Shown here one piece after another: positions 14,679 to 63,600 of a stretch of DNA of 64,000 bases. Below the pieces are notes generated by a model. That model saw only the letters and a list, made by a program, of their open reading frames with translations. It searched no databases and was not told the DNA's origin. The stretch lies in assembly GCA_964252035.1 (NCBI GenBank), contig OZ176216.1; one strand, given 5' to 3'. Position 1 is the stretch's first letter; the number at the start of each line of letters is the position of its first letter. A program made the translations under genes and the position numbers. The stretch comes from Podarcis erhardii (Eukaryota).

Positions 14679-14753
14679 GTTATCCAAATTTTGTCGCGAC
14701 CTATGGCCGAGGATACCCTGGATTTGCCCCCAGTTACAGTTATCAGTTCCCAG
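14679..14753 (+). CDS. MSI2: Musashi-2 coding exon: (G)[24 protein letters not shown]
   Basis: 75 nt, acceptor ...cttctatattcaag|GT, donor CCAG|gtacgt, phase 1-1. Joins in frame to exon 287-401. Matches MSI2 [19 protein letters not shown](G)YQFP. Confidence 0.97.
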
Positions 14754-20640: not shown

Positions 20641-21390
20641 TCACTTGAAAGAATGCTTATCACCGATAAAACCCTCTCCCAGGGTATCAAGATCAGAGGA
20701 GCAGGGCCTCTTGCAAATACCCTTCCTCCTGAGAAATTAAGAGAAGTGGCTCCCAAATCCATGAACTCCAAATGGTGGAACATTACTTGTCTGCCTCTCC
20801 ATCTCTCTTTCTCTCTTTCCCTCTTTCTTCCTTCTCTGTGCCTTTAGGAGGCATGGGGGGGAACCATTCCCCCCTTTTAAGGTGAGTATTCATGCTGCAG
20901 TCCTAAGCCTTGCTTGTTTTGACTCTCCTTTCTATAATGTGTCACCTTGCCTGTTTTTATTTTATTTCATTGTTATTTTATGTTGTGGTTTTATTGCTTG
21001 AATTGTGAACTGCTTTGTAAAAAAAAATGTCAGAAAGTGGTATACACGTTTAGTATATAATATATAAACCTGTCATTTCCTCAATAATTCATGGGAAGAA
21101 ATGGTGTCTGTCACCTTCTGGGAAGGTGGAAGGAATGCCACACACTTTGACAACTAAGGTCGCAATCCTCAGCATACAACTTGGGAGCAAGCCCCATTGT
21201 ACTCAATGGGACCTTCTTCTGAATAGACATGGATGGGATCAGGCTGCACTTCTAGCTTTCCTTAGCCCCCATTATGCTTTTTGAAACCAATTGAAATTGC
21301 TCGCTATCCTGTCTCCCCTTTTTAAAAAAAGTTCTCGGACTTATCTTTACAGTTTAATCTATTAATTTCTGTTCTTATTTCACTTTGCAG

Positions 21391-21431
21391 ACTATTTGCC
21401 GATTTCACAAGACATAATTTTTATCAACTAG
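21391..21431 (+). CDS. MSI2: MSI2 alternative terminal coding exon: (D)YLPISQDIIFIN*
   Basis: Strong acceptor ttctgttcttatttcactttgcag|AC. In frame after YQFP, stop TAG at 21429-21431. Nearly identical to the recalled short mammalian MSI2 isoform end DYLPVSQDIIFIN. Confidence 0.88.
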
Positions 21432-23130
21432 TTCTTAAAGATGCATAACAAATTAATCGGGGTTTACTGCAGTGCTAATGAGAGAGAGTGAGAGAGAGTG
21501 AGAGAGAGAAAGCCTGGGTGGTCTGTACATTAATATCAGTATCCACTGGAAAAAAATATGCTGCTCTTACTGACTCCTTTGGCTGACTGGACTATATTTT
21601 TTTAAAAAGAAAATCTCCATATCTTTTTCCTGTTTTTTGATTTTTCCTTCTTTTTGTTCCCCCACCCCCTGCTTTGTATGAGTTTGTTTTTTTTAATACC
21701 CACATGGAATGTAACTCACATCAGGGTTGGCTGCGGGTGAAGGCATTACAATTTCTCACAAACTTTTAGGGACAATTCTCTTGTCTTCACTGAGATGTGC
21801 TGTTTGACCCACCTTAAAAAGTCCGGAAGGAGATTTCGGCTGGCATTTATTGCTATACATCAGCTCTGAGACGCAACAGCAGCTATCCCTTGTTGGCGTT
21901 CAGAATGGTGGTTGCTACAGCTATTGGACAAATGAGGAGGAGGAATCTGATTAAAATTAATCCGGTTGGTGGAGGTCACTTTTGGTTTGGGATGGATCTT
22001 TCAGTAGCCATTATGCTGTGGACTGCTCCGCACCACCACAAAAGCCATAAACGCTGGTTCAAATAACTGACCAAGAGCTCTGCTTAGAGAACTCAGTTGT
22101 GCTCCCTCTTAAATGTAAAGCTGCCTTGCCAATCAACTCATGGACCTTGGTGTTCATCGTACGACTGACACTGAGTTGCTGCCGAAAGCAGAATCCCTGA
22201 CACCAGGTCATGTTGTGGTATCATCATGACACGTTTCCTGGTTAGCAGCAGCCCAGCCCTTCCCAGGCTTAATTGAGTGAACTGCTGGCAGCCAATTTGG
22301 CAGACTAATCTGAGTTGTTGGGATGAGGCCTGGTTGGTCCTTGAGGTGGGTGGTCCATCTGTGCAAGGGGCTTACCACCTTCAGACATTAGGTCGGGGCT
22401 GCCGTGATAGAATCCTTTGCACAGGGGCATTCCCTGCACATAGAAACCTGGATGTCTGAGTTCCAACCTAGCCTTCCTCCTGACATGCTAGCGCTCTGTG
22501 TGCAGAGACCGAAGGAGCATTCTGTTTTGTGAGCCACTGCCTGCAGTTCAGACAGCTGGGCCTCACTGTCACTGCTCTGTGGCTTTGAGACTTCCATGGG
22601 AATTGGCTTTCCAGCTGTATGACAAGTCTGGGCACCCTCCTGTATTGATAATGCAACAAAGAAAACAGGCCCTTCTACTTATTTCCTAAGTTTGTGAGAA
22701 ATTGGCTGCATGCTTACAGTAGGACTGGGATGCATTTTTAAATATATGTTTAATTCACTTGTTTAAAATGTCAAAGTCACTGCAATCGGAGTTGTGCTGT
22801 TCATTTAATAATGGTGCTTGATGTAATAACTGTTTAGTTTTTCTCTTTTTTCTCTTTTTTGCAAGCTATGGCTTTTGAAACCTGTATGGCTTTTTTAATT
22901 ATTATTTTGCGGGGGAGGGTTTTTTGCTATTATTTGCTTTGCATTTGTGATCTTGTCCTAGAATGCATGATTTTGCAGACATTTAACTGTTGTATGATTT
23001 TTTTTTCTTAATTCCTTTGGTTTCTTTTGTAAGTAGTTCATCTGTGCTTTTCTTTGCTTTTCTTTTTTGGTTAAAAAAAAAAATCCTTGTAGAAAAGGTA
23101 GAAAAAGTGATAATAAATTGTTACAATAGA
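21432..23130 (+). other. MSI2: Probable 3' UTR of the short MSI2 isoform (3' end uncertain)
   Basis: Follows the stop codon. U-rich, largely TE-free sequence. AATAAA at 23112-23117, with another at 24069-24074. Confidence 0.45.
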
Positions 23131-24501
23131 CAAGCTGTGTTTTTGCTCTCTTAGCTTGCACTTTCAATTCGGTTGTACCAAATAACCAGTACCAATAACA
23201 ATGTAATGAAAAAATACATAAGTTAGTAAAAAGCATGGCATCTCTTTTCAACATGCGTCAAAGTTTTGCTGCAGATTAAATGTTGCATTTTAGTTCAATA
23301 TATTTAAATGAAAGTATAAAAGCAATGGGAATATGTAGATTACTGGTGGGTTGTATCTTTTTTTTTATGACAGCACAAAGAATGAGCCATGCTGACCTCT
23401 GAGTATCCTAGCTGTCCATGTTAAACAAAAATAGGCTTCATGGGCACAATAATATTTTAGATCAACAGCAGCTAACTTTTTCAGTCTGAAAATCGGCCAC
23501 ATTGACTCATAGTAAACCCATACTAAGAGTCACACGTCAAAGTGGGGGTGGTCAAAAGTTTTTGTGTCGTTTTGTTATTAAGGTCAGTTGGTTGGGGGGC
23601 AATGTCACAAAACCTTTTGGCATCACAGCAGGGGACTGGAAGTATAAAGTAGTTTTTATTTTATTTTTAAAAGATAATGGTAACATTTCAAAGAACAAAT
23701 TGGTGGTCTGGGTCCTTGGAGAGCCACAATGAAGCTTTTGCATCACAGAATCACAGCAGGGGATCTATGGAGCAGTTAGTGAAAAAGAACTATCTGGGGA
23801 AAGGAGGTCTAAGGGGCACCAAAGAACCTCTTTTGGGCTGGATACGTCCTGCAGGCCATGGGTTAACCATCCCTGTTTTAGAGACTGGGATGACAAAAAG
23901 CCCACTGAATTCATAAACAAAGAAATACTCAGAAGGAAGCTCAGATCAATCGTGGACAAGCTCTTGGTTTCCAGATCTGTTCTGGAAGGTATTTGAAAAG
24001 TGTTTTTCGATGAGTTGTTGGGGTTGTTTGTTTTTTAACACATGGGAGTGAGTAGCACTCTACTGTAAAATAAATGCAATTCGTCCATCCACTGCAGTTT
24101 GCCACCTGTCTCTCTAAAAAAAAATGACACGCAAATCACATTAACGCAAATCACATGCAAGAATAAGAATACAACATTGCTGAGGCCTTCCTTCACGTCA
24201 TGCCTAATTTCGCAGGGCTCTGACCATAAAATTATTTAGGTGCTAGTTTTTCTCAGCTCATGAAATCTGCCCTAGTTTGGCCAAGCTAGACCTGTCTGCA
24301 GTGTTGGGGTGTCCATGCATGAATGTGCACGCACATAAAATGAGTAAATGAAGAGGGTGATCAAATGGAGTTTTTACATCCTGACTTAGCTGTGTTCAAC
24401 CCTGGGTAGGACCCCAAAAACTTATTTAATTCTGAAAGTTTCAGGTTTCATCAAAATTTGTGAAATGTGTCAGACTGCAGTTCTGATGAGACTTTCATCT
24501 A

Positions 24502-24546
<45 letters not shown>
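24502..24546. repeat. (TACT)n tetranucleotide microsatellite
   Basis: About 11 perfect units. Confidence 0.97.
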
Positions 24547-25439
24547 GAATCATTATGGTCCATGACAGAGAGCATTCTTTGTTGTATTGGTGTACAGCTC
24601 AAACCCCACAATTGAATGACACCCCACCTTAGCTGGGTCACATCAGTGGCACCACCGTCATTTTATTCCGCAAATAAAAAATTGAAAAGGGAATTTAAAG
24701 TCTATACCAGGGTGGTGGAAAGTATTTTTAACTCAACCAGTTAGTTGACTTGTTTTAGAAACATGGCTTTAATCTGAGTTTAAATGCACTTTGCAAAAAT
24801 GGAAAGGATCAACTGGATTTGTGCATACAGTCTGCCACTGCTTTCAGTTTGTGTCACGTTCCCCCACCATGCAGACAGGTATATGGCCAAACGGGTAAAA
24901 TGTGTGTATTTTCACTGGGTTTCCCTGGATTCCATGCAAGCAAAATGAAATGGCAGCACAAACGGACTGAAAAACGCATCCATCGCACAGATGAAGAATA
25001 ATTAAAATTCACAAGACAAACACCACATTGAACACGCATTTCTTTTAAAGGTCATAGCTTGGGCAAAACAGTGACCTTGCTTCTGTTTTTATGTTGAACT
25101 TTGGGAAAGCAGGAGCCTTTCCAGATAATGAAAAAAGTAATACATTTTAGTGCTTTAATAACATTGGTGATGACTGTGGCCCAAATTTCCATCCCCTTGG
25201 AATGCTTTTTGGAGTGGGGGGGAGGGGGAGTAGATAATCTTGTTTTTGTTTTAAAGGGCCACACCTATGCTCCAGCACTTGAGCATGGGAGAGTTTGGCC
25301 TTTACATTTTGCTTTAAAAAAAGATCACAGGTGGGGCAACCAGGACTACATGCAGTGTTTATTTTTACTTTGAATGGTAGATAAAATGTTATTGCATAGG
25401 TATCTGCTGGACAGTGTTTCTGACCTTTCTGGTATAAGC

Positions 25440-27308: not shown

Positions 27309-27379
27309 TGGGATCAGAAGCATATAGACAAGTAGTGCAGGTTCTTCAGGACTTACATTCTATGGTCCTGCCTATTGGT

Positions 27380-27700
27380 AGTAGTCAGCAGTCTTACATC
27401 TGCTTTCTGGACTAGTTAGCAGCTTCAGGACAATCTTCAAGGGTAGCCTTACATAGAGCACATTACAGTCCTCCAGTCAGGAGGTTAGTAGAGTGGGGAT
27501 TACCATCCAGGAACAGCCAAAGCTAATAGTAGGCACTCCTTGCACAAAGGTCACTCGGGCTTCCAGTTAAAAGAGTTGGCTCCAGGAGCACCTCTAGACT
27601 ACAAATCTGTTCTTTCAAGGCAGGTGCGACTCTATCCAGAACATACAATCTATTTAATTCCTGGACCAGAGAACTACCAATCCACATCTGTTATGCAGGA
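27380..27700 (-). mobile_element. Decayed L2 fragment
   Basis: gggtagccttacatagagcacattacagtcctccagtcaggagg is the antisense of the L2 SRLDYCNAL-type region. Confidence 0.4.
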
Positions 27701-37720: not shown

Positions 37721-38599
37721 CTCAGAGGAAAACATTCAAAAAAAGTAAGAAGTCTATAAATGCAATCTGAAAGGTGTACTCCAAGGCTGGTATCATAGAG
37801 GAGTCTTGGGATGTGTTGTGCCTCCTCTTGGGTGATGAAATGTCTCAGGCAGAGGTCTATGAGGAGCAGAGAATCTGAGTCACTGTTAAAAATAATCAAG
37901 GCTCCCACCCACCCCAATCTACCTTTGGCTACACTACACAACCCCAAAATGGCATCATGGCAACCAGGAAGCAGAGCTGTTGTATAGGCAAGCTGAGGGG
38001 CTGGTGCTATGACTGGCCAAGGATTTGTTGGAAGGGACAAGGGAAAACTTCCTTTAGCTTCCAGTTGTTCGGTCCAGAAAGTAATCTGTTAAATTGTTAC
38101 ACATCTTTGCCTTTCAGTAGCAAACATCCAGACAAACTTCTTTCCTCTTCCATTCCTGCTGTTGCTGACACCCATCCTATCCCTCTATTGTTCAGCCTGA
38201 TGTTGTACACAAGTGTCATAAGAAAACATGATCGCTAGATCTGGGGTGTGGCAGCCTCTGGAAGCTGGTGTACTTGATAGGTGGAAGCAGGTATACTTGA
38301 TAGGTGACCCGCATGCCCATCCCAGCTGACATGGCAGCCAGGTGTGGACATACTGAAAATGAATTAGTTTCTGCACTTGCTTGGGTCTAGTCTCTGCAAG
38401 CAGTTTCTCTTTTCTTTCCTGCCCAGCCACTGCAACCTTGATAACCACTTCAGCACCACAATTGAAGAGCATGCCAATTAACCTCTGCATTTAATGAGAA
38501 TGGGACCTAGCTTTTCTTTGAGCAAATGTTTTGTGTATGGGGGACGGGCTTCGAGGACAGCTGCATTTATTTACCTGGAATGTTTTTTTCCTTCAACAG

Positions 38600-38623
38600 C
38601 CCTATTACCATATTTAAATGCAA
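38600..38623 (+). CDS. MSI2: MSI2 24-nt in-frame microexon: (A)LLPYLNA(S)
   Basis: Acceptor tgtttttttccttcaacag|CCC, donor GCAA|gtatgt. 24 nt, phase 1-1, no stop. Gives YQFP-ALLPYLNAS-FPAAAY. A similar peptide is recalled from predicted vertebrate MSI2 isoforms (not verified). Confidence 0.75.
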
Positions 38624-38651
38624 GTATGTCTCTCTTAATTCATATTTTGCA

Positions 38652-38751
38652 GTAGTTTAGAGACACTTTAGCCTCTCACTTCTGTTCAGCTTTTCCCTGT
38701 TAGCAATACATGTAGCTACGGTGATAGAACTAGAGCTAGCAGGCTTGTAGT
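38652..38751 (+). promoter_or_regulatory. UAG cluster (putative Musashi-binding intronic splicing enhancer) downstream of the microexon
   Basis: 9 TAG at 38653, 38658, 38669, 38701, 38713, 38725, 38731, 38737, 38748, including GTAGT twice. Confidence 0.6.
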
Positions 38752-40862
38752 TGGCTGAGTTCTTTGGATCTCTTTTTCTCTCTCTTATCTTTTCCTCTGC
38801 TTTCCGAATCCTCTTTTTATTTTCTTTGCCTCTGGCCTCCATATGGTTGTCTTCATAATGAGGAACTATGAGCAGCGTAATCACTGGCCAAGAGTGCCTC
38901 CTGTCTTTTGTCATCACAACCAAATTTGGCAATACAAATTAGAGTTCTCCAAAGCTCACCTCAAATTAACTCAGAAATTACTTGAGTTCTTTGGGAAAAA
39001 ATGGAAGGAACTTGGGTGATTTTTCTGAGCCACTCCAAGGGCTCAGAGAAATTATTGGCCTTTCTGCCTTCTCCTTCCTTTAAAGGTCTCCCCACACGCT
39101 CCCAGTTTCATGATCTTAATTTTGAAGTAATGGTAGCAGCAGTGAAAGCAGACCAACATGTTAGCTAACAACCTACCGGCCCATGGGGAACTGTGACAGA
39201 TGTAGTTCTCTGAAGAGCCACTGCCCTCATTTAAGATCAAATATGGGTGGGTATATGGATTCTGTGGGGGCAAGGCAACTACATCTCCTATGGTGTCTTC
39301 TTACCCAGAAGGCTGCTCCGACTGGATCACAGAAGTAATGAGAGAGGGTGAAAACCTCTCTTCTCTTCGCTCCATGTACTTGCAACTTTTGCTGCCGCTG
39401 CCGCTGCTACAACTTCAGTGGCCGAAGTGGATTTAGGGCAGCACGACCGGTTCCCCCACACAGGGCGCCAAGCTGAGGGGGTGCCTTCCATCCTCCTTTC
39501 CAAAGCCTACTAAGTGCTTGCCCAGCTTTGGGAAGGACACAGGAGGACTCTGGGACCCTGCCAGAATCCTCATGCCTCCTTCCCAAAGCCCGGCACCTCA
39601 CCTACCAGATTTTGGGAAGGCGGCACAAGGGCAGTGTCAAATTTTGGCCTCGCCCAAGGCATTGTATTACTGAGATCCACCCCTGTCAGTGGTAGGGAAG
39701 GGAGGAGAGTGTGTTCTGAGATGGCTGGCAGGAATAGGCAGGAGAGAAGCGAGTTCACATTCTGATTAAAGTCAGGGGGAAAATTGAGGGCTTTTAAAAG
39801 CTCGCCCCTCATTTGAGCTTGTTTCTGAACCCAAGCTCAGAGGACTGCACCAGCATCCCTGGACAAAATTTGACAAAGGGCAGAAAACCCTCCCAGCATC
39901 TCCTTGTCCCTGCAGCCCGGGGCATCTTTGATTACCAGCTCCTTATTGCTTTTAAGAAGCTCCTCCTCAATGGTGGCTGGTCCCTATCATGCAGCCCCAA
40001 CTGCTGTTCTACAGATCCTTGACTTGACTGTCAGCACTTACAGACTCTTGGCCTGTAGAATTGCCTTCCTCACAACCTTCTGCCCTGCCCTGTCTCAGTG
40101 GACCTATCTCAGGGTAGCCATATTCAGGAGTCTTCCTCATTCACATCTAAGCAGGGCACTGGACCAGCTCTAGGTATGAGAGGCACCCTCAACAATGATG
40201 GGCCTTTTGGGCTCCCTCCCACATCAGTGACCTCCCTGTAGCCTTACCTGGTGGCATCGACACACAGCAGCAGCACTCTGATGAGTACCAGGCAGTTGTG
40301 TCTGGGGGAGCTTCCATTTTTGTTTCCCACAGTGCCCCTTCCATAGCCTCCATTCAGAGCATTGTGGAGGATTAAAAGGGTGTCCCTCACTAAGCAGGGT
40401 TCCAGAAATACTTTTTAAAAAGTGTGTGTGCTGTGTATTGATGCTGGACCTGGTGGGGGCTTTGATGTTCATTGCAAAAGAGTGCAGGGCTTGGCAGGAG
40501 TTGAAGCTTGCTTCCTCCCCCGGCCACACGCATCCCTTCAAGCACTTTTCTCCTCCAGCCCAAACCACTGGACCTAAGGCTCACCGCCTGCCTTCTGCTT
40601 TGACCCGGGAGTTTCATTTTGTGCTGCTTCAGTGGAAGATCCACTCACATGTTGATTTTGAATTTTTGCACAAAATAAGAAGGAATATAGGCGCCGGTCT
40701 CTGCTTTGGCAGCACCACTGGCTGCCCATTCACAACTGCGCTGAATTGCTCTGAATTTCTCCATGGGCAGCTGCCACTTTTACCTTGCAGGAGAAGGGGA
40801 ATGGCATCAAAGCGCTTCCACTCTTAAGACCCACCCAAACTCCTCTGCAGTCAATGCTCTCT

Positions 40863-41009: not shown

Positions 41010-41069
41010 GTTTTCCGGCAGCAGCCTACGGACCAGTAGCAGCGGCAGTGGCAGCAGCAAGAGGATCAG
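41010..41069 (+). CDS. MSI2: Musashi-2 coding exon: (G)FPAAAYGPVAAAVAAARGS(G)
   Basis: 60 nt, long pyrimidine tract then ...cacggccag|GT, donor TCAG|gtaggg, phase 1-1. Matches the MSI2 Ala-rich segment. Confidence 0.96.
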
Positions 41070-41126
41070 GTAGGGGGGGCCGTGGAAGAGGCGGCTACAT
41101 GGCATACCTTCAGAATGCAGGGCCAG
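41070..41126 (+). CDS. MSI2: Alternative 5' splice-site extension of the preceding exon: GRGGRGRGGYMAYLQNAGP(G), an RGG box
   Basis: 57 nt (19 codons), open in the MSI2 frame, ending at a good distal donor CCAG|gtaaaa that keeps phase 1. Confidence 0.7.
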
Positions 41127-44100: not shown

Positions 44101-46254
44101 TGTCTAAACCACAAGACATCAGTTCAGTGTATATTTATTGATCTCTCACTGCTGAACAGATTTGGGGGGGGGGGAGGTCTGCACCCCTGCAGAAGTTTGT
44201 AGTTGGGCCCTGTGATTTCAGCACTGCCGTACACACAATTATTATTATTTATTAGAATAGTATACTACCCTATACTCTTAGGTCTCAGGGTGGTTCATAA
44301 CATAAGAATTTGTGTGTTCATGGATCTTTAAACCACACTTCATAAGGCTGGCTGTTGGATGTAGAGAATTCTGTCTTTACTCCCCACTCTGGCCTCTTGT
44401 GCATCCCGTAAGGGTACTCTACTAATTACAATCCACAGGCAGATGACCCCTCCCTGGAGCAAGGGCCTATGCTTTTAATTTTGGTGGGGAAACATCTATT
44501 TTATTTTTATTTTTTCTTTACTAAATTGCTATACTACCTTTCATCCGAGGATCACAGGGCGATATTAGCCTGGGAGTTGGGGCTGTATGTTTCTTCGTTC
44601 ATATTTATAGAAACATTTATGTAATGTACCTCCTTTCAGCCCTGAAAGGTCCCCCAAGGCAGGTTACAACAGTGAAAACACTTCTGTAATTACAACTGGA
44701 GAGCATTGAGGGAAGCCAAGAGAAAGCAAATGAAACCAGCCTCCCAGCAGGCCACAACACGAACTAAAACTTTGGTAGGAAAAAGAAAGTATTGACCACC
44801 CCGCCTCCCTGAATGGCATTGTAGAAGGGGCCTATCTTATCTCCTTTGGGAGAGAGTTCTGCAGCTGTGGGACTATCACCAAAGAGGCTCTGCCTGGTAA
44901 CCGTCATGGGCAGTGCCCATGTGCCAAACGTTAGCCAGACCGTTATTAAAACCACGCAATTGTTGAGGCCATTGCAACCCTCCATATAAGCCAAGCCTTT
45001 ACACCCACCTTGACAACATTTCACTTTCCTCTTATTATGTTATTGATGAATCAGGACCTGGGTCACATTGGCATGATGGTCTGCATCTTGTAACAAACTC
45101 TTCCAATGCACAAGTTTCACTATCAATACCACATTTCTGTTACGATTCCAAGCATGTATGGATTTCGTGGGCAGGCTTCCCCATTCAGTTTGATGGAGGT
45201 GGCAGCTTGATGCACAAACCTCTTTGCCTGTTGGCAAAATCCACTTGTAGGGAAGGGAGCCATTGGGGCAGAGCTTACTGGAAAGATATTGATGGTTGGA
45301 GGTGATTTTTTCCTCTGACATACTTAAAGCACCAGTATTTAGTGTGCCCCGCCCAGTTCAGACACTCAACCAAGCTTCGTCAGCAGTCCATGAAGTGGGT
45401 GGGTGCCCTTCTCCTCCCCCCTGGGGGAGCTCTGTGTATCCAGTGCCCTGATTCATGCAGTTCTTCCTGCATTGGGCCATCATGCATACAGGCCCCTGCA
45501 TGGAGCACCCCTCACACGCTTTATTTGGATAGATGGTGGAAGACCACCATGTCTGTTCTTCTACCCCGTTAATAGTACACTGAGCCGATTTCACCCTTTC
45601 CTGAAAATGCTGTTTGCTTCTTCGTTTCACAAAGGTGAAGTTGGGGAGCGGGGTTAATTCGGGGTTTTGCTTTGTTTTTTAAAGGAATATAAAATTTGGC
45701 AAGTAAAATGCATTAGCCAGATAGTTCTGTGGCTTTAGTTTCTTCCCTCGTGGCTGGAAAATGGGATGGCCAGTGATTCTGTTGCTTGGCCGTGGGGAGG
45801 CACCAAAGTCTACTTGCTTGACCACTTGTGAGTGACTGCACTAAGAACGAAGTGGTAAAACCCCCAAACAGAAAGATCCCCCAGAGTTCCTTCTTGCTCC
45901 CCTCCACCTTGGCCAGAGTCCTGCTCCTACTTCTGAAATCCTGAGTTCACCAGTTCCTTACTGTCCTTTATACTTGCCAGCTATAACCAATCTCATAACA
46001 TGAGCTACTGACCTTGATGGTGAGTGTGAGCAGTTATGTTCTTGTTGTTTTCTCTCTTGCTTGGTTGGGGCTGCTGTGAGAGAGGGTGTCTCTGAGGCAT
46101 TCTTTCCGGCCTCTCTTACACTGGGACGTGCACTCCTCTCAAACACTCTTCTGAGCACGCTCAGCAGGAAGGTTTGTCCACACCTATTAATCCTCTCTCT
46201 GTGTCCAGCTTCTTGTTAGTAGCAGCTGGTTGCATGTTTTTTTTGCTTGTTCAG

Positions 46255-46412
46255 ATGAAACGGTTTAAGAAACGACTCATATCCAACTCTTGAAAAATGT
46301 CTCTCTCTCTCTCTTTCTCTCTCTTTTTAAAAATATATATTTATTTTTGTTTATTTTAGTACACTTTCTCTCTTTTGGTTTTTTTAAAAATTACTTTCCC
46401 TTACTTAATAAA
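46255..46412 (+). other. Candidate alternative terminal exon ((D)ETV* plus short UTR with AATAAA)
   Basis: Acceptor ttttttttgcttgttcag|AT. In phase 1 reads G|AT GAA ACG GTT TAA (stop 46266-46268). AATAAA at 46407-46412, followed by GU-rich sequence. Confidence 0.3.
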
Positions 46413-46510
46413 ACAAAACACTTGTTGTTCGTGAAACATCTCACATCTCCCCTTGCCTGTTCTTAGAGTGTTATGTATCTGTGGGACTGAACTAAATGCA
46501 TGCACTTGTC

Positions 46511-46678
46511 GTAGTTGTAACCGGTAGCAGTAGACGTAGTTGTAGAACATGCATTGTTGAGTTGATATTATAGGTTCTTGTCGGCTCGAAAGAGCATGGC
46601 AGTTGCAGTGTAGCCGCGGTTTGATTGGAAGTGTAGGTCAACCTGTGTAGAGCAATGCTGAACACCTGGATGCATAGT
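46511..46678 (+). promoter_or_regulatory. RUAG cluster (putative Musashi-binding array)
   Basis: 10 TAG (46512, 46525, 46531, 46537, 46543, 46571, 46611, 46634, 46648, 46675), all preceded by a purine and 8 as GTAG. TGCATG at 46497-46502. Confidence 0.55.
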
Positions 46679-49628
46679 ACAGTGATCATTATCTCCCAAA
46701 CTTGGGCCTACCAAATTCAATCAGGACATTTTATTATTCTGCAAGGGCCCTTTGGTGGTCTGGCAGGGGGTAGTCAATTGACCGTTGTAAAAGAAAAAAA
46801 GTGACCCTTCTTTTAATTCTAAATACACTTACTTGTGAGTAGTTCCCACTTAAGCCAATGGGAGTTACTCATATGTAAGTGCTTTATGATTTGAGGCCAA
46901 GTTTAATTTCAGCAAGCATTGTACACTCAAGGCTTCCTACAGAACATTAACCTTCTTAATATTCTGCATTAGTGCTCCGAATCCTTTTTGGAAGCCTTAA
47001 ACCAGGCCGGCAGAGCAGGAAAGCCGTCCATTGGAGACCTAAGTCCTGGAGAGTATGTACAATGACTAACCGTCAGAGTATGCAGAGGCACAAGGGAATT
47101 GGTTTTAGATCCTAAAGTGCAAATTTGGCTACGCCACAAACTTGCCACTGTTTGTATTCATTCCCACATTGCCAAGTTTTAGGATAATGTTTTGGTTTTT
47201 CCTCCCCTCAAGCACTACTGAACATTTCATGAACAGTCAATATTAGGTGTCCCAAGGCAAGTCTCATCATCTTCCTCATCAAACCAGCAAAATCGTCTTT
47301 TGCTTCTTCTCCCTCCCTTCATTTCTTTCTTTCTTTCTTTTTTGCACCTAGTTTTCTGTACTCAGCTTCTCAAAATTGTTTTCCAAATGAGCAGCAGTGG
47401 GTAGGGTTGGCAGCTGGTAATTCAAGTCCTGAATGCCACATTACATTTGGTTTGTGGCTGCTACTGTTTTGTCAGCACATATCCTGCTGAGAGTAGATTG
47501 TGTACATCACTGTTCCCCTCCCACCCAGTTCGACATCTTGCCTGAAGATGCACTGCTGGTTTGGAGTGTGTTCAATTTACCAAGCATGCTCAATGTAGAC
47601 GGTTAAATCCAAGCAGTTAACTCAGCATATGTTACTGGAAGAAATAAGGTACGCTAAATATTGTTTCATTGTGCAGTTAAGAATATTGTTCTAACAGATC
47701 ATAAAACACGCAGACTGCCCCCCTCTCCAAATGTTGTTGACCCAGATGACAAGTACATACCCTTCATTGATTGAAGGTGTCCCCCTTCCCTTATTGCGCC
47801 AGTATAGTTGTAAATCTTACGCACTTGAGGTATGATTATATAACTTGTCTCTTAAGCAGCAAATCTACTACAAGGAATGGGGCCCACTGTTAAATGTGTG
47901 ATGCAGGAAAATTAGATGGGTAACGTATCTAAAAGTTAGCAAAGCGGAAAATTGCATGGGAAGTAGCAATCCACGTCGTACACTTAATTCCAGTACTTTC
48001 AAATATTTAGTCTTGTCATTAAGCACCTCTCTTGTTTGCAAATTGCAGTAATAAAAAAAGAAAAAAGATGGGAGCAACAGTTGGTTTGTGTACACAGAAT
48101 GATGATGGGGAAACTTGTAGCAACATGTTGGAACAGTTTGAATAGCCACTTGTGTTTTCTTCACAGTCCAAGGGATAGACCTTGAAGCAAGCCCTAGATG
48201 CTTAAATGTATATATATTACTGTCTAAAAAGTGTATAACATTTAATCCAAGTCATGTAGTCAGAATGTTAACCAGCACCACCTGGGGGATAGCAAGTGGT
48301 TTGTCTAATGTCTTTCTCCTCTGAAAGACCCAATAATTACAACTGGAGCCCTAGACAGCTGATGCAATAGAAAGAGAAAATCTTAATGCATCTTAATGCA
48401 CCTACTAATTTTCACTCTATAGTGTGGTAAAAAGAAGATGCATCTATAAATGCTTCTATTTGCCTAGCCTTATAAATGCTTCTATTTGCCTAGCCAGCAG
48501 AATGAGACTGGAATGATTTGTCCATAAGTTCAGAGCAGGAGGGTTATCCAGTAGACCAAATAGTAAGCTAAGGCTTAGAAAGAGTCTTTTAATGTAAAGA
48601 ACAACACTACAACCTAGTATGCCCTTCCCTGCCTTGTGCTTCCCATAGTAGGTTGTATCCAGAGATAACTGTGTCCATTGGTTTTCTTCATTCCACCACT
48701 GTATCTATGCTCTCCTTTAAAAGCAAGCACTTGAACTAGCATATATAACTTATAGCACTTTGACATATTTGAATGGCTTTTGCGTCCCCCTGCACTTCCA
48801 TTGCCTAGTTCTACTTTTCCCCTTTGGGACCACCAGAAAAAAAATTATTATCCTGGTTCCTTAGGCATGGTTCACCCCAGACTGGACGGTCCTCAGCTCC
48901 TGTCAATTTCCCCACATTTAAAAGCTGGTCTGCTAACTTTTAAGTGCCAGCTATCTGGTTCAAATGGAGACGATCCTTTTCATCCTGGCCTGGCTTGTCC
49001 CTAAACATCCCCCAGTGCCTAAGAAACCCAAAGCCCCCCCCCCCGATGCCACGGTCTGATCCAGACATTGAGACTCCTCAGCTCAGCCTGCACACAGCCT
49101 CTTCTTTACCTGTCCCACAGAGAGTCATGCATGCGACTCAGGTGGCACATCCCATTTCTCCACTTGAGGCATAATGGGAATGCGCTGCCCTTCAAGCCTT
49201 CCTTACTTGTGCGGCATGGTGGCAACCTGCAGAGCGCCGGCTTCTGCCAAGGTCTCGCCAAAATCTTAGGAGATCTCATGCTGTCCAAGAGCTACTTCCT
49301 GAAATCTTGCCAGCTCCCGGTGCTGCTTTTCTACTGCACTGGGTGCTGCCTCTTGGGCTTCTACCACTCAAGGCAACTATCTGGCTCCAGTCAGTCCGGC
49401 CCTGATGTGGCTCTTTATGTAGTACGCTGGAAAACTTTCAAACCCCTGCTGGCTTTCTGCCTGCATGCCTGCTGTTGCTACATATTGAATTTGTTTACTT
49501 GAAAAATTGTGCTTTGATAGATAAAAAGGTGAGACATTTTGCTGCCCTGGTGTTCTCGCCCTGCTGTCAAACTCACTTGTTGCCTTGATGCTTTGTCACT
49601 GGGGCTCCTCTCTTGCTCAAAGTGCAGC

Positions 49629-61500: not shown

Positions 61501-61719
61501 TCCAGGCTCAATGCCTCTGAACCTATGAGTCTGAGTTAAGGACCCTGGAGCATGTATGATCAAGCTGTGGTCCACTTGCTCCTCAAAATCCTACATACAT
61601 ATATTTTTGCTCTTGTTTCCGTGATTTGTAACTGTAAAAAAATAATAATAAAGTACAATTTAATATTGAAAATAAGAACCAATCCAGTATCCACAATGAT
61701 AGAGTCACTGTATCTCCAG

Positions 61720-61896
61720 GGATCCCCGATTACGGTTTCTATTCTCCGCCCGGTGACCAACGGGCTCAATTATCCTACGCGGACTATGGTTCCATGGGGC
61801 CTCGGGTGGCTCAGATGCTTCGTAGCGAGCACCCTGCTTCAGCGAGTAACTCCCCCCTTCACCACCTTCCCAGCCCGGATCAATTTAAAAGCCCAG
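61720..61896 (+). CDS. MSI2: MSI2 177-nt cassette exon: (G)IPDYGFYSPPGDQRAQLSYADYGSMGPRVAQMLRSEHPASASNSPLHHLPSPDQFKSP(G)
   Basis: tatctccag|GG ... CCCAG|gtttgt. 177 nt = 59 codons, phase 1-1, no stop. 12 CpG in 177 nt against a CpG-poor background. P/G/S/Y composition resembles the MSI2 C-terminus, and the peptide resembles long non-mammalian MSI2 isoforms as recalled. Confidence 0.8.
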
Positions 61897-63600
61897 GTTT
61901 GTATAGAATTTCATTCATTTGGGGAAGCAAAAGGAAAGAAAAATGGCAGTAGCATCACATATTTAACGATGCACAGAAAGAGATCTGCATGCTATGTATG
62001 CCACTTAATGGTTGGCAATCAAACTTCACTCCATCCTTTTACTCAGTTCTAGAATTTTTGTCGACTTTGCTTCAGTTGTGAAGGGCACAATTTTCTTTTA
62101 GGGGCTGTTCCAGATCTGATCAAATGTCAATCAAAACCTTTTGTAGAGGCATGACAGCAGAGAGTGAAGTAGCTCATTAGATGTGCAGGGCAATCTTATT
62201 CATGTCTACTTGGAAGTAAGTCTTGAGCTTACTAAAAAGTACATTCCCTCTTAAGATGGGTGTGAATCAAAATTTAGCTGTATTCTTTAAAGATTAAATA
62301 AAGGACCCTAATAATTTGTGTTGATTTTTTCAAGGTTCTTCTTAACCCCAGAGATTTTGATGAAAAAGGTTTCAAACTGCATATTCTGTTGAAAGTTATT
62401 ATTAGCTAGGTATTTGACCTGAAAGAGATGCTTAAAATAAGGTGTGTGTGCTTGTGCATGAATGATACTTCATCCTCCTGAGAATCTTTTACTTTGCTTC
62501 TTCCAGAAATTTGTTTCTGACATTTGATGAGCTCTTTCATTAGCAATCTGATCCTAAATACCTCTTCAGTGCACCTATCTTATGCTGCATAAGCTTCATG
62601 TAGTTTATCATTTCAACTGAACTGAGAACTATTGTTAGATTTAACTATGGTTTCTCCAAACAATCCAAGATCCAATTGTGTTTTCTGATCCTGACTTGTT
62701 TGGATAAAACCATTGTTGGAATTAAATGAAAATCCTGGTTTGGATGAAACAATAAACAGTGGTTGGTTGAAAATGCTTTTGATTTGTTCTTTGTGGCTAT
62801 AACAGGAAGAGAGGGGAGAGCAGACCAAGTCAGGCTCACTAAATTACAACTTAGTGTTATGTCCGAACCTGGTCATTGTTTTCTACAAGGATTCCACAAA
62901 TGTATCTATGACTTAGATTTTTAGCACACTCTTTCTTGAAACAGACAGTCTTCTCAGGGCCCCTTCACACCTGTTTTTGAATCATCACCAAATGCAGATG
63001 TGCAAATTCTGCATTCCACCTAGAATGAACTCTCGCAATGAAACCTTGGTTTACATTATGTGTTGAAAGAGTTCCTACTGGTCTTAATGTTTAAATAAGA
63101 GGAGGAATGTCTTGCTGTTGCTCATAGGCATGTGGTGGCTTCTAAATATATACTTACATAGAGTTCACCACTTGAATGAGTTAGCCATCAACTCTCCCCT
63201 CCCCACCTTGGAAAATCCTACGTAACTAGTTGGCCTAAATACCTGTACATGGGGTTGATTTTTTGACAGTCTTGTAAAATTGCTGAAGTGCTTTTGCCTA
63301 GAAAATAGAAAGCCATCATTTCCTCCTCACTTTGTGAATCCACCTCAGTATAATGCGCCATATGCTAAGGCAGATGTCATAATGAATCATGGCTGGAAAT
63401 AACTCCCCATTTTATCAAAGAGAGTTTATCTTTCAGTGGTGACCTTTCTTGTCCAGGACTGGAGTAATTTGTGTGCAGGCTTTGTGTTAACATGCCAGTT
63501 CATAGGACAAAGTGCCTGATAAGCCAGCCTTAGCTCTCACTTGTCAGCAGTGCCAGCAGAATCATGCTCTGGGCTTTTGCCACACAAGCACTCCTTAAGG

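What the first reader, a model, noticed from the sequence alone, without database searches (positions are those of the whole stretch)
38600..38751. 24-nt MSI2 microexon followed by 9 UAG motifs: candidate Musashi splicing feedback loop
Seen: a frame-preserving microexon with good splice sites, then 9 TAG in 98 nt starting 30 nt past the donor (roughly 2 expected from base composition). The nearest upstream UGC is 36 nt from the acceptor, so the SRRM3/4 microexon signature is weak. Established: Musashi RRMs bind (G/A)U1-3AGU/UAG and promote inclusion of alternative exons, notably photoreceptor-specific ones, when bound to the proximal downstream intron. Inference: MSI1/MSI2 switch on an 8-aa hydrophobic insert (ALLPYLNAS replacing G) in MSI2 itself, a dose-sensing auto- or cross-regulatory circuit. 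Caveat: a similar UAG density also occurs in a decayed L2 at 27379-27532.
Basis: partly seen in the sequence, partly recalled or inferred. Interest (0 to 1): 0.8.

Follow-up and report, generated by a model that had tools for sequence, protein, structure and literature searches.

The report
Known Musashi-activated MSI2 sensory-neuron microexon

Summary
Window 38600-38623 is a 24-nt, phase-1, stop-free cassette between MSI2 exons 14679-14753 and 41010-41069. Nine TAG lie at +30 to +125 of its donor, the densest TAG cluster in the 64 kb.

The same exon is already in published data:
- Mouse Msi2 chr11:88368212-88368235 has PSI about 93% in rods and 95% in olfactory sensory neurons, and 14% or less elsewhere (Ling 2020).
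- It falls from about 0.83 to 0.45 in photoreceptor-less retina (Murphy 2016) and from 0.85 to 0.38 in the Msi1/Msi2 photoreceptor knockout (Matalkah 2022).
- The human exon goes from 0 to 34-52% on MSI1 overexpression in HepG2 (Ling 2020).

Orthology is shown here. A sperm-whale MSI2 isoform carries the identical ALLPYLNAS insert. Quail, ostrich, hamster, dolphin and sturgeon genomes hold the same 24-nt exon with only synonymous changes, followed by 6-11 TAG at nearly the same offsets.

Musashi-driven inclusion is therefore supported and already known. A closed, dose-sensing feedback loop is untested, because the insert's function is unknown. The scan's notes held no earlier record of this exon on other DNA.

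The parts
14679..14753 (+). Upstream constitutive MSI2 exon (75 nt, ...[24 protein letters not shown], ends in phase 1)
   Evidence: Same length as the mouse exon flanking the published microexon (88386044-88386119, 75 nt).
38570..38599 (+). Acceptor region: pyrimidine tract ending in AG; the only nearby UGC is at 38562-38564 (-36)
   Evidence: The acceptor tract is conserved in five other species.
38600..38623 (+). 24-nt phase-1 cassette microexon replacing G by ALLPYLNAS in the MSI2 C-terminal region
   Evidence: Identical insert in Physeter MSI2 isoform X13. Orthologous 24-nt exons with only synonymous changes in L001-L005. Published mouse and human exon of the same size in the same intron.
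38624..38629 (+). Donor GTATGT after exon-final A: sub-consensus (no G at -1, T at +4)
   Evidence: Identical GTATGT in all five other species.
38653..38750 (+). Cluster of 9 UAG (6 fit RU1-3AG): putative Musashi-binding intronic splicing enhancer
   Evidence: densest in the window. (same offsets in ostrich, quail, hamster, dolphin, sturgeon; 3 UAG invariant in all six). (UAG triplets kept in 4.0 of 5 species against 1.1 of 5 for other triplets; 0 of 20000 permutations). No conserved RNA structure.
38755..38840 (+). CT-rich tract (83% pyrimidine; TCTT at 28/kb over 38637-38850 against 7.4/kb in the window): possible PTBP1 sites
   Evidence: [quoted passage not shown] PTBP1 knockdown raised the MSI1-induced PSI of the human exon from 34 to 52%. 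PTBP1 binding here is inferred.
41010..41069 (+). Downstream MSI2 exon (60 nt, FPAAAYGPVAAAVAAARGS); an alternative donor after 41126 adds 57 nt
   Evidence: The mouse counterpart is 63 nt (88366784-88366847); other species carry one more Ala codon.

Best explanation
Window 38600-38623 is the ortholog of the published rod-photoreceptor and olfactory-neuron specific 24-nt MSI2 microexon. It has a sub-consensus donor and is skipped by default. When nuclear Musashi is abundant (chiefly MSI1, redundantly MSI2), the RRMs bind the nine UAG motifs at +30 to +125 of the downstream intron. This acts as an intronic splicing enhancer that promotes use of the weak donor, so the exon is included. PTBP1 sites in the flanking CU-rich tracts probably oppose this. 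The result is an in-frame switch from G to ALLPYLNAS in the MSI2 C-terminal region. Shown: the anatomy, the conservation, and the responses of the mammalian orthologs to MSI1 gain and to Msi1/Msi2 loss. Inferred: direct binding at these UAGs, use of the exon in this species, and any consequence of the insert.
For: Anatomy. Identical insert in an annotated mammalian isoform. The same exon occurs in quail, ostrich, sturgeon, hamster and dolphin, with only synonymous changes and 6-11 TAG in +1..+150; only 0.07-0.6% of 150-nt windows in each locus reach that count. UAG columns are conserved (3 invariant in six species; 4.0 of 5 against 1.1 of 5 for other triplets, 0 of 20000 permutations). Literature: mouse exon PSI 92.8 in rods, 95.1 in olfactory sensory neurons, 13.8 in brain and about 0-4 in most tissues and neuron types. 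WT retina 0.80-0.85 against Aipl1-/- 0.38-0.52. Msi1/Msi2 knockout 0.85 to 0.38, with skip-junction reads rising from about 35 to about 95. Human exon 0 to 33.9 with MSI1 overexpression and 51.8 with added PTBP1 knockdown; about 0 with PCBP2 overexpression and in all ENCODE knockdowns. General rule that Musashi bound to UAGs in the proximal downstream intron activates exons.
Against: I found no CLIP peak or UAG mutagenesis for this intron. In the knockout, Msi2 itself is floxed, and the residual PSI (0.38) matches that of photoreceptor-less retina (0.45), so part of the drop may be loss of photoreceptor-derived Msi2 mRNA and not regulation. The rise in skipping reads argues against this being the whole story, but read depth is not normalised. 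MSI1 overexpression in HepG2 also activates cryptic exons, so sufficiency at very high dose does not prove physiological control. Ciampi 2022 reports that most retinal microexons respond to SRRM3/4, not MSI1.
Confidence: 0.8

Rival explanations
1. The exon is real, but its sensory-neuron inclusion is set mainly by other factors (SRRM3/4, or loss of PTBP1 and other repressors). The conserved UAG cluster would then serve another UAG-binding protein (hnRNP A/B type, DAZAP1) or an RNA structure.
For: Most retinal microexons respond to SRRM3/4 and only about 9% to MSI1. PTBP1 knockdown adds to the MSI1 effect. A UGC lies 36 nt upstream. The knockout result is confounded by the floxed Msi2 allele.
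Against: MSI1 alone takes the human exon from 0 to 34%, whereas knockdowns of PTBP1, HNRNPA1, HNRNPA2B1, HNRNPAB and DAZAP1 each leave it at about 0-1%. PSI is 0-4% in most neuron types listed, which does not fit a pan-neuronal SRRM4-type microexon (that SRRM4 is pan-neuronal is my own knowledge, not checked here). None of the nine UAGs sits in the UAGGG context preferred by hnRNP A1 (the motif preference is my own knowledge). The consensus fold is weak (-5.1 kcal/mol) with no favourable covariation term.
Confidence: 0.1
2. In this species the segment is a conserved but unused pseudo-exon, or the match is chance, and the TAG cluster is a compositional accident.
For: There is no transcript evidence from this genome. 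The TAG count alone gives only about 0.2 after correction for all window starts. Another TAG-rich stretch lies at 27379-27532.
Against: The encoded insert is the same in all six species, and the five other loci differ from one another only by synonymous changes. Splice sites are intact, and TAG offsets are retained from ray-finned fish to mammals, including two birds. Such constraint is not expected of an unused segment.
Confidence: 0.04
3. Closed feedback loop: the ALLPYLNAS insert changes MSI2 activity or localisation so that Musashi output feeds back on Musashi function.
For: Musashi controls the exon. The peptide is invariant over the sturgeon-to-mammal span sampled here, which implies a selected function. 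Other MSI2 C-terminal isoforms differ in function (variant 2).
Against: I found no data on what the insert does. The exon is frame-preserving, so it gives no NMD-type dosage control. HepG2 shows PSI 0 both in control and after MSI2 knockdown. None of the papers read discusses a loop.
Confidence: 0.2

Closest known systems
Mouse Msi2 exon chr11:88368212-88368235 (mm10) and human MSI2 exon chr17:57650650-57650673 (hg38): the rod-specific, MSI1-responsive exon of Murphy 2016, Ling 2020 and Matalkah 2022
   Same: 24 nt and in the same intron, between the 75-nt ...YQFP exon and the 60/63-nt FPAAAY... exon. The insert peptide is identical to an annotated mammalian isoform. Hamster and dolphin genomes show the same exon and the same UAG offsets.
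   Different: Different species (a non-mammalian tetrapod, by the pattern of alignments). Intron lengths differ: 2.4 kb to the next exon here against 1.4 kb in mouse. Usage here is untested.
Ttc8 exon 2A, the paradigm Musashi-activated photoreceptor exon (Murphy 2016)
   Same: A microexon of 30 nt or less, activated by Musashi bound in the downstream intron, included in photoreceptors, and conserved across vertebrates.
   Different: For Ttc8, direct binding and loss of the response on mutation were shown by pull-down and minigenes. For the MSI2 exon only overexpression and knockout RNA-seq exist. The host gene here is a Musashi paralog itself.
SRRM3/4-dependent neural and retinal microexons (Irimia 2014; Ciampi 2022)
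   Same: Size class, neural or sensory restriction, and deep conservation.
   Different: The upstream UGC signature is weak (one UGC at -36). PSI is near 0 in most neuron types. The exon responds to MSI1 alone.
Classical RBP autoregulation through poison exons or NMD (e.g. PTBP1, SR proteins)
   Same: A splicing regulator family acts on the pre-mRNA of a family member.
   Different: The exon is in frame and stop-free, so it changes the isoform and not the dose. No negative feedback is demonstrated.

Membership tests
Musashi-activated photoreceptor-type cassette exon | UAG cluster in the proximal (about 200 nt) downstream intron | tested here: met
   9 UAG at +30..+125, the densest in the window. 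Conserved in five other species.
Musashi-activated photoreceptor-type cassette exon | Inclusion rises with Musashi gain and falls with Musashi loss | tested here: met
   From the literature, for the orthologs only. Human: 0 to 33.9 and 51.8 with MSI1 overexpression. Mouse: 0.85 to 0.38 in the Msi1/Msi2 knockout (confounded by the floxed Msi2 allele). Not tested in this species.
Musashi-activated photoreceptor-type cassette exon | Photoreceptor-enriched inclusion | tested here: met
   Mouse ortholog: rods 92.8, olfactory sensory neurons 95.1, other tissues 14 or less. WT against Aipl1-/- retina, dPSI 0.379.
Musashi-activated photoreceptor-type cassette exon | The exon is actually spliced in the organism of the window | not testable with these tools
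Musashi-activated photoreceptor-type cassette exon | Direct Musashi binding at the intron (CLIP, pull-down, mutagenesis) | not tested
   No eCLIP peak table for this intron was among the supplementary files held.
Orthology with the published mouse/human MSI2 24-nt exon | Same intron, size, phase and encoded peptide | tested here: met
   Flanking exon sizes are 75 and 60/63 nt. ALLPYLNAS is present in Physeter isoform X13. The same exon occurs in hamster and dolphin DNA.
SRRM3/4-dependent neural microexon | UGC motifs close upstream of the acceptor, and inclusion across neurons | tested here: not met
   A single UGC at -36, and none in the last 30 nt in the other species. PSI is 0-4 in most neuron types. 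The response to SRRM3/4 itself could not be looked up because the Ciampi supplement is not held.
Autoregulatory poison exon (NMD feedback) | Inclusion introduces a frameshift or a premature stop | tested here: not met
   24 nt, phase 1 to 1, no stop codon.

The most novel reading that the evidence does not exclude
The invariant ALLPYLNAS insert alters MSI2 localisation or activity, so that the Musashi-driven isoform switch closes a feedback loop specific to ciliated sensory neurons (rods and olfactory sensory neurons). The loop would be held in place by a UAG-cluster enhancer conserved from sturgeon to mammals.
Probability: 0.2. Interest if true: 0.55.

Novelty: already known. Interest (0 to 1): 0.3.

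Why it matters
Musashi proteins are needed for photoreceptor morphogenesis, photoreceptor survival and vision, and one of their conserved splicing targets is their own paralog. In the papers I read this appears only in supplementary tables and is not discussed. The analysis here adds two things. First, the exon and the individual UAGs downstream of it are kept in all six species compared, from sturgeon to mammals. That marks the UAGs as the constrained units and gives a clean natural test case for a Musashi intronic enhancer. Second, the mouse data show equally high inclusion in olfactory sensory neurons, so the switch is not purely a photoreceptor feature. Whether the 8-residue insert changes MSI2 function is the open question. 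If it does, there would be a real feedback loop. If it does not, this is one more entry in a known target list.

Tried and rejected
- **Reads.** There is therefore no read or contig evidence from this species. The protein query used only the flanking exons, the alignment starts at 38637, and the local BLAST queries left out 38589-38636.
- **Sequencing runs.** The runs could not then be laid.
- **Locus look-ups.** P0006 (whale) and P0005 (opossum) are not on record. The Menidia gene range is too long, so no DNA was returned.
- **Teleost.** The Coryphaenoides locus has an assembly gap (22189-24770) exactly upstream of the FPATAYG exon. The absence of the microexon there, and the blank nhmmer search, therefore mean nothing.
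- **Intron flanks.** BLASTN of the flanks against quail found nothing at 1e-5. The element is too short and diverged for that, but anchoring on the exon revealed it.
- **Rivals set aside.** A tandem repeat and a conserved RNA structure as explanations of the cluster. An hnRNP A1-type silencer: no UAGGG motif, and no derepression in the ENCODE knockdowns.
- **Other blanks.** The Ciampi 2022 supplements are not held. Searches for an explicit autoregulation claim found none. The scan's own notes hold nothing on this exon elsewhere. A TAG cluster after the KKAQPK exon in dolphin is not shared by the window or by birds.

Full report
**What is in the window.** Six-frame reading shows that the window is an MSI2 locus on the + strand.
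- Exon 287-401 encodes VECKKAQPK...GMGML and ends in phase 1.
- Exon 14679-14753 (75 nt) encodes [24 protein letters not shown] and ends in phase 1.
- Exon 41010-41069 (60 nt) encodes FPAAAYGPVAAAVAAARGS and has a second donor after 41126.

The finding lies 23.8 kb into the intron between the last two exons and 2.4 kb before the third. Positions 38600-38623 are 24 nt, preceded by a long pyrimidine tract ending in AG and followed by GTATGT. The donor is sub-consensus: A at -1 and T at +4. The only nearby upstream UGC is 36 nt from the acceptor.

**The UAG count.** TAG starts are at 38653, 38658, 38669, 38701, 38713, 38725, 38731, 38737 and 38748, which is nine in 98 nt, beginning 30 nt past the donor.
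- The window-wide mean is 1.14 per 98 nt, and this is the only place in 64 kb with eight or more.
- The opposite-strand motif CTA reaches a maximum of eight.
- Six of the nine fit RU1-3AG and two fit RU1-3AGU.
- No tandem repeat underlies the cluster.
- The Poisson tail is 3.3e-6 per window, about 0.2 after a crude correction for all starts. The count alone would not be decisive.

**Reads.** I therefore have no transcript evidence from this species.

**The exon is already published.** All three sources concern the mammalian orthologs.
- **Matalkah et al. 2022** (PMC9509328, Supplementary Data 12, exons down in the Msi1/Msi2 photoreceptor double knockout). The table lists mouse Msi2 chr11(-):88368211-88368235, with an inclusion form of 123 against a skipping form of 99, i.e. 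24 nt. It is flanked by a 75-nt and a 63-nt exon. PSI is 0.83-0.87 in controls and 0.29-0.45 in the knockout, dPSI 0.47, FDR 0.
- **Murphy et al. 2016** (PMC4991804, S3 Table). The same exon has PSI 0.80-0.85 in wild-type retina against 0.38-0.52 in photoreceptor-less Aipl1-/- retina.
- **Ling et al. 2020, mouse** (PMC6952364, Supplementary Data 1). PSI is 92.8 in P28 rods, 95.1 in Omp+ olfactory sensory neurons, 12.3 in hair cells and 13.8 in brain. It is about 0-4 in most other tissues and neuron types (up to 8.8). A supplementary figure text names Msi2 among previously reported rod-specific exons.
- **Ling et al. 2020, human** (Supplementary Data 3). The human exon chr17:57650650-57650673 (24 nt) has PSI 0 in HepG2. 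It reaches 33.9 with MSI1 overexpression and 51.8 with MSI1 plus PTBP1 knockdown. It is 0 with PCBP2 overexpression and about 0 in all listed ENCODE knockdowns, including PTBP1, MSI2, HNRNPA1, HNRNPA2B1 and DAZAP1.
- **The general rule.** Musashi bound to UAGs in the proximal downstream intron activates exons. The same papers establish this by eCLIP splicing maps, tethering and Ttc8 minigenes.

A protein search with only the three flanking exons returned sperm-whale MSI2 isoform X13. Its junction reads YGYQFP-ALLPYLNAS-FPAAAYG; all the other junction-spanning hits have G there. I fetched genomic loci for five other species whose DNA covers this intron and scanned each locus itself. The same 24-nt exon is present in all five:

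| Species | Locus and coordinates |
|---|---|
| Quail (Odontophorus) | L001 23627-23650 |
| Ostrich (Struthio) | L002 32886-32909 |
| Sturgeon (Acipenser) | L003 14660-14683 |
| Hamster (Cricetulus) | L004 37910-37933 |
| Dolphin (Sousa) | L005 28284-28307 |

Each copy has an AG acceptor, a GTATGT donor and only synonymous differences. The teleost locus L006 has an assembly gap where the exon would be and is uninformative.

**Conservation of the UAGs.** TAG offsets from the donor are as follows:

| Species | TAG offsets (+1..+150) |
|---|---|
| Window | 30, 35, 46, 78, 90, 102, 108, 114, 125 |
| Ostrich | 30, 42, 47, 76, 87, 99, 105, 111, 122 |
| Quail | 32, 48, 53, 79, 90, 94, 102, 108, 119 |
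| Hamster | 29, 34, 48, 53, 86, 96, 108, 114, 121, 132 |
| Dolphin | eleven, in the same pattern |
| Sturgeon | 35, 76, 91, 103, 109, 120 |

- In each locus, only 0.07-0.6% of 150-nt windows reach the observed count.
- In the alignment starting at 38637 (A1), the UAGs at 38653, 38737 and 38748 are invariant in all six species. Four more are kept in four of the five other species.
- UAG triplets are kept in the same columns in 4.0 of 5 other species, against 1.1 of 5 for all other triplets of the same span. None of 20,000 permutations reached this.
- The surrounding intron is otherwise so diverged that BLASTN did not align it to quail.
- RNAalifold finds no convincing shared structure: -5.1 kcal/mol with an unfavourable covariation term.

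The UAGs themselves are therefore the constrained units, which is what a Musashi binding array predicts.

**Mechanism.** The best reading is a weak-donor microexon that is skipped by default and included when nuclear Musashi is high. Musashi would act through the UAG array as an intronic enhancer. PTBP1 probably opposes it. The tract at 38755-38840 is 83% pyrimidine, and PTB-type motifs are enriched over 38637-38850. PTBP1 knockdown adds to the MSI1 effect on the human exon.

What is shown and what is inferred:
- Shown: the anatomy, the conservation, and the gain and loss responses of the orthologs.
- Inferred: direct binding at this intron, usage in this species, and PTBP1 binding.

Caveats:
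- Msi2 is itself floxed in the knockout. The residual PSI equals that of photoreceptor-less retina, so loss of photoreceptor-derived Msi2 mRNA may explain part of the drop. Skipping-junction reads nearly tripled (about 35 to about 95), which argues for a real switch.
- Very high MSI1 in HepG2 also activates cryptic exons.

**The feedback loop.** What is demonstrated is cross-regulation: MSI1 changes the MSI2 isoform. HepG2 shows PSI 0 both in control and after MSI2 knockdown. Msi2 knockdown had minimal effect on rod splicing, whereas Msi1 knockdown abolished most of it. The exon is in frame, so it is not a dose-correcting poison exon. I found no data on what the insert does, and no paper read discusses a loop. 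The invariance of the peptide over the sturgeon-to-mammal span argues that it has a function, so a closed loop stays possible, but it is untested.

**Verdict.** The dose-sensing loop is not shown. New here are the base-level conservation of the UAG array across six vertebrates and the point that the exon is used as fully in olfactory sensory neurons as in rods. The scan's own notes held nothing on this exon on other DNA.

Noticed in passing
window 21390-21431 (+): An open frame reads DYLPISQDIIFIN followed by a stop. It matches the unique C-terminus (DYLPVSQDIIFIN) of the truncated human MSI2 variant 2, encoded by alternative exon 11b in this same intron (MacNicol 2017). The surrounding 21290-21779 aligns to quail and ostrich.
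   Followed up: partly
window 45955-46679 (+): A deeply conserved non-coding block aligns at 76-87% to ostrich, hamster, dolphin and sturgeon. It may be an alternative 3' end or UTR of MSI2.
   Followed up: partly
window 41070-41126 (+): An alternative donor extends the FPAAAY exon by 57 nt encoding a GRGGRGRGGYMAYLQNAGP stretch. A similar RG-rich extension (GRGARGRGG) follows the FPATAYG exon in the Coryphaenoides (teleost) locus; sturgeon, hamster and dolphin read differently there.
   Followed up: no
window 61707-61904 (+): This stretch aligns to the teleost locus L006 37756-37954 at 74%.
   Followed up: no
whole window against L001-L005: Only short conserved islands align to birds, at about 78-79% and no better than to mammals. 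The window is therefore probably a non-avian, non-mammalian tetrapod, although the best partial protein hits were avian. The source genome's contigs total about 1.3-1.6 Gb.
   Followed up: partly
L005 about 1234 (dolphin): There are 10 TAG in 98 nt just downstream of the KKAQPK exon in dolphin. The window, quail and ostrich do not share this, so it is probably lineage-specific.
   Followed up: yes
Ling 2020 Supplementary Data 1, Msi2 row: The mouse exon is included at 95% in Omp+ olfactory sensory neurons, as high as in rods, and at 12% in cochlear hair cells. The main text of that paper never mentions olfactory neurons.
   Followed up: no
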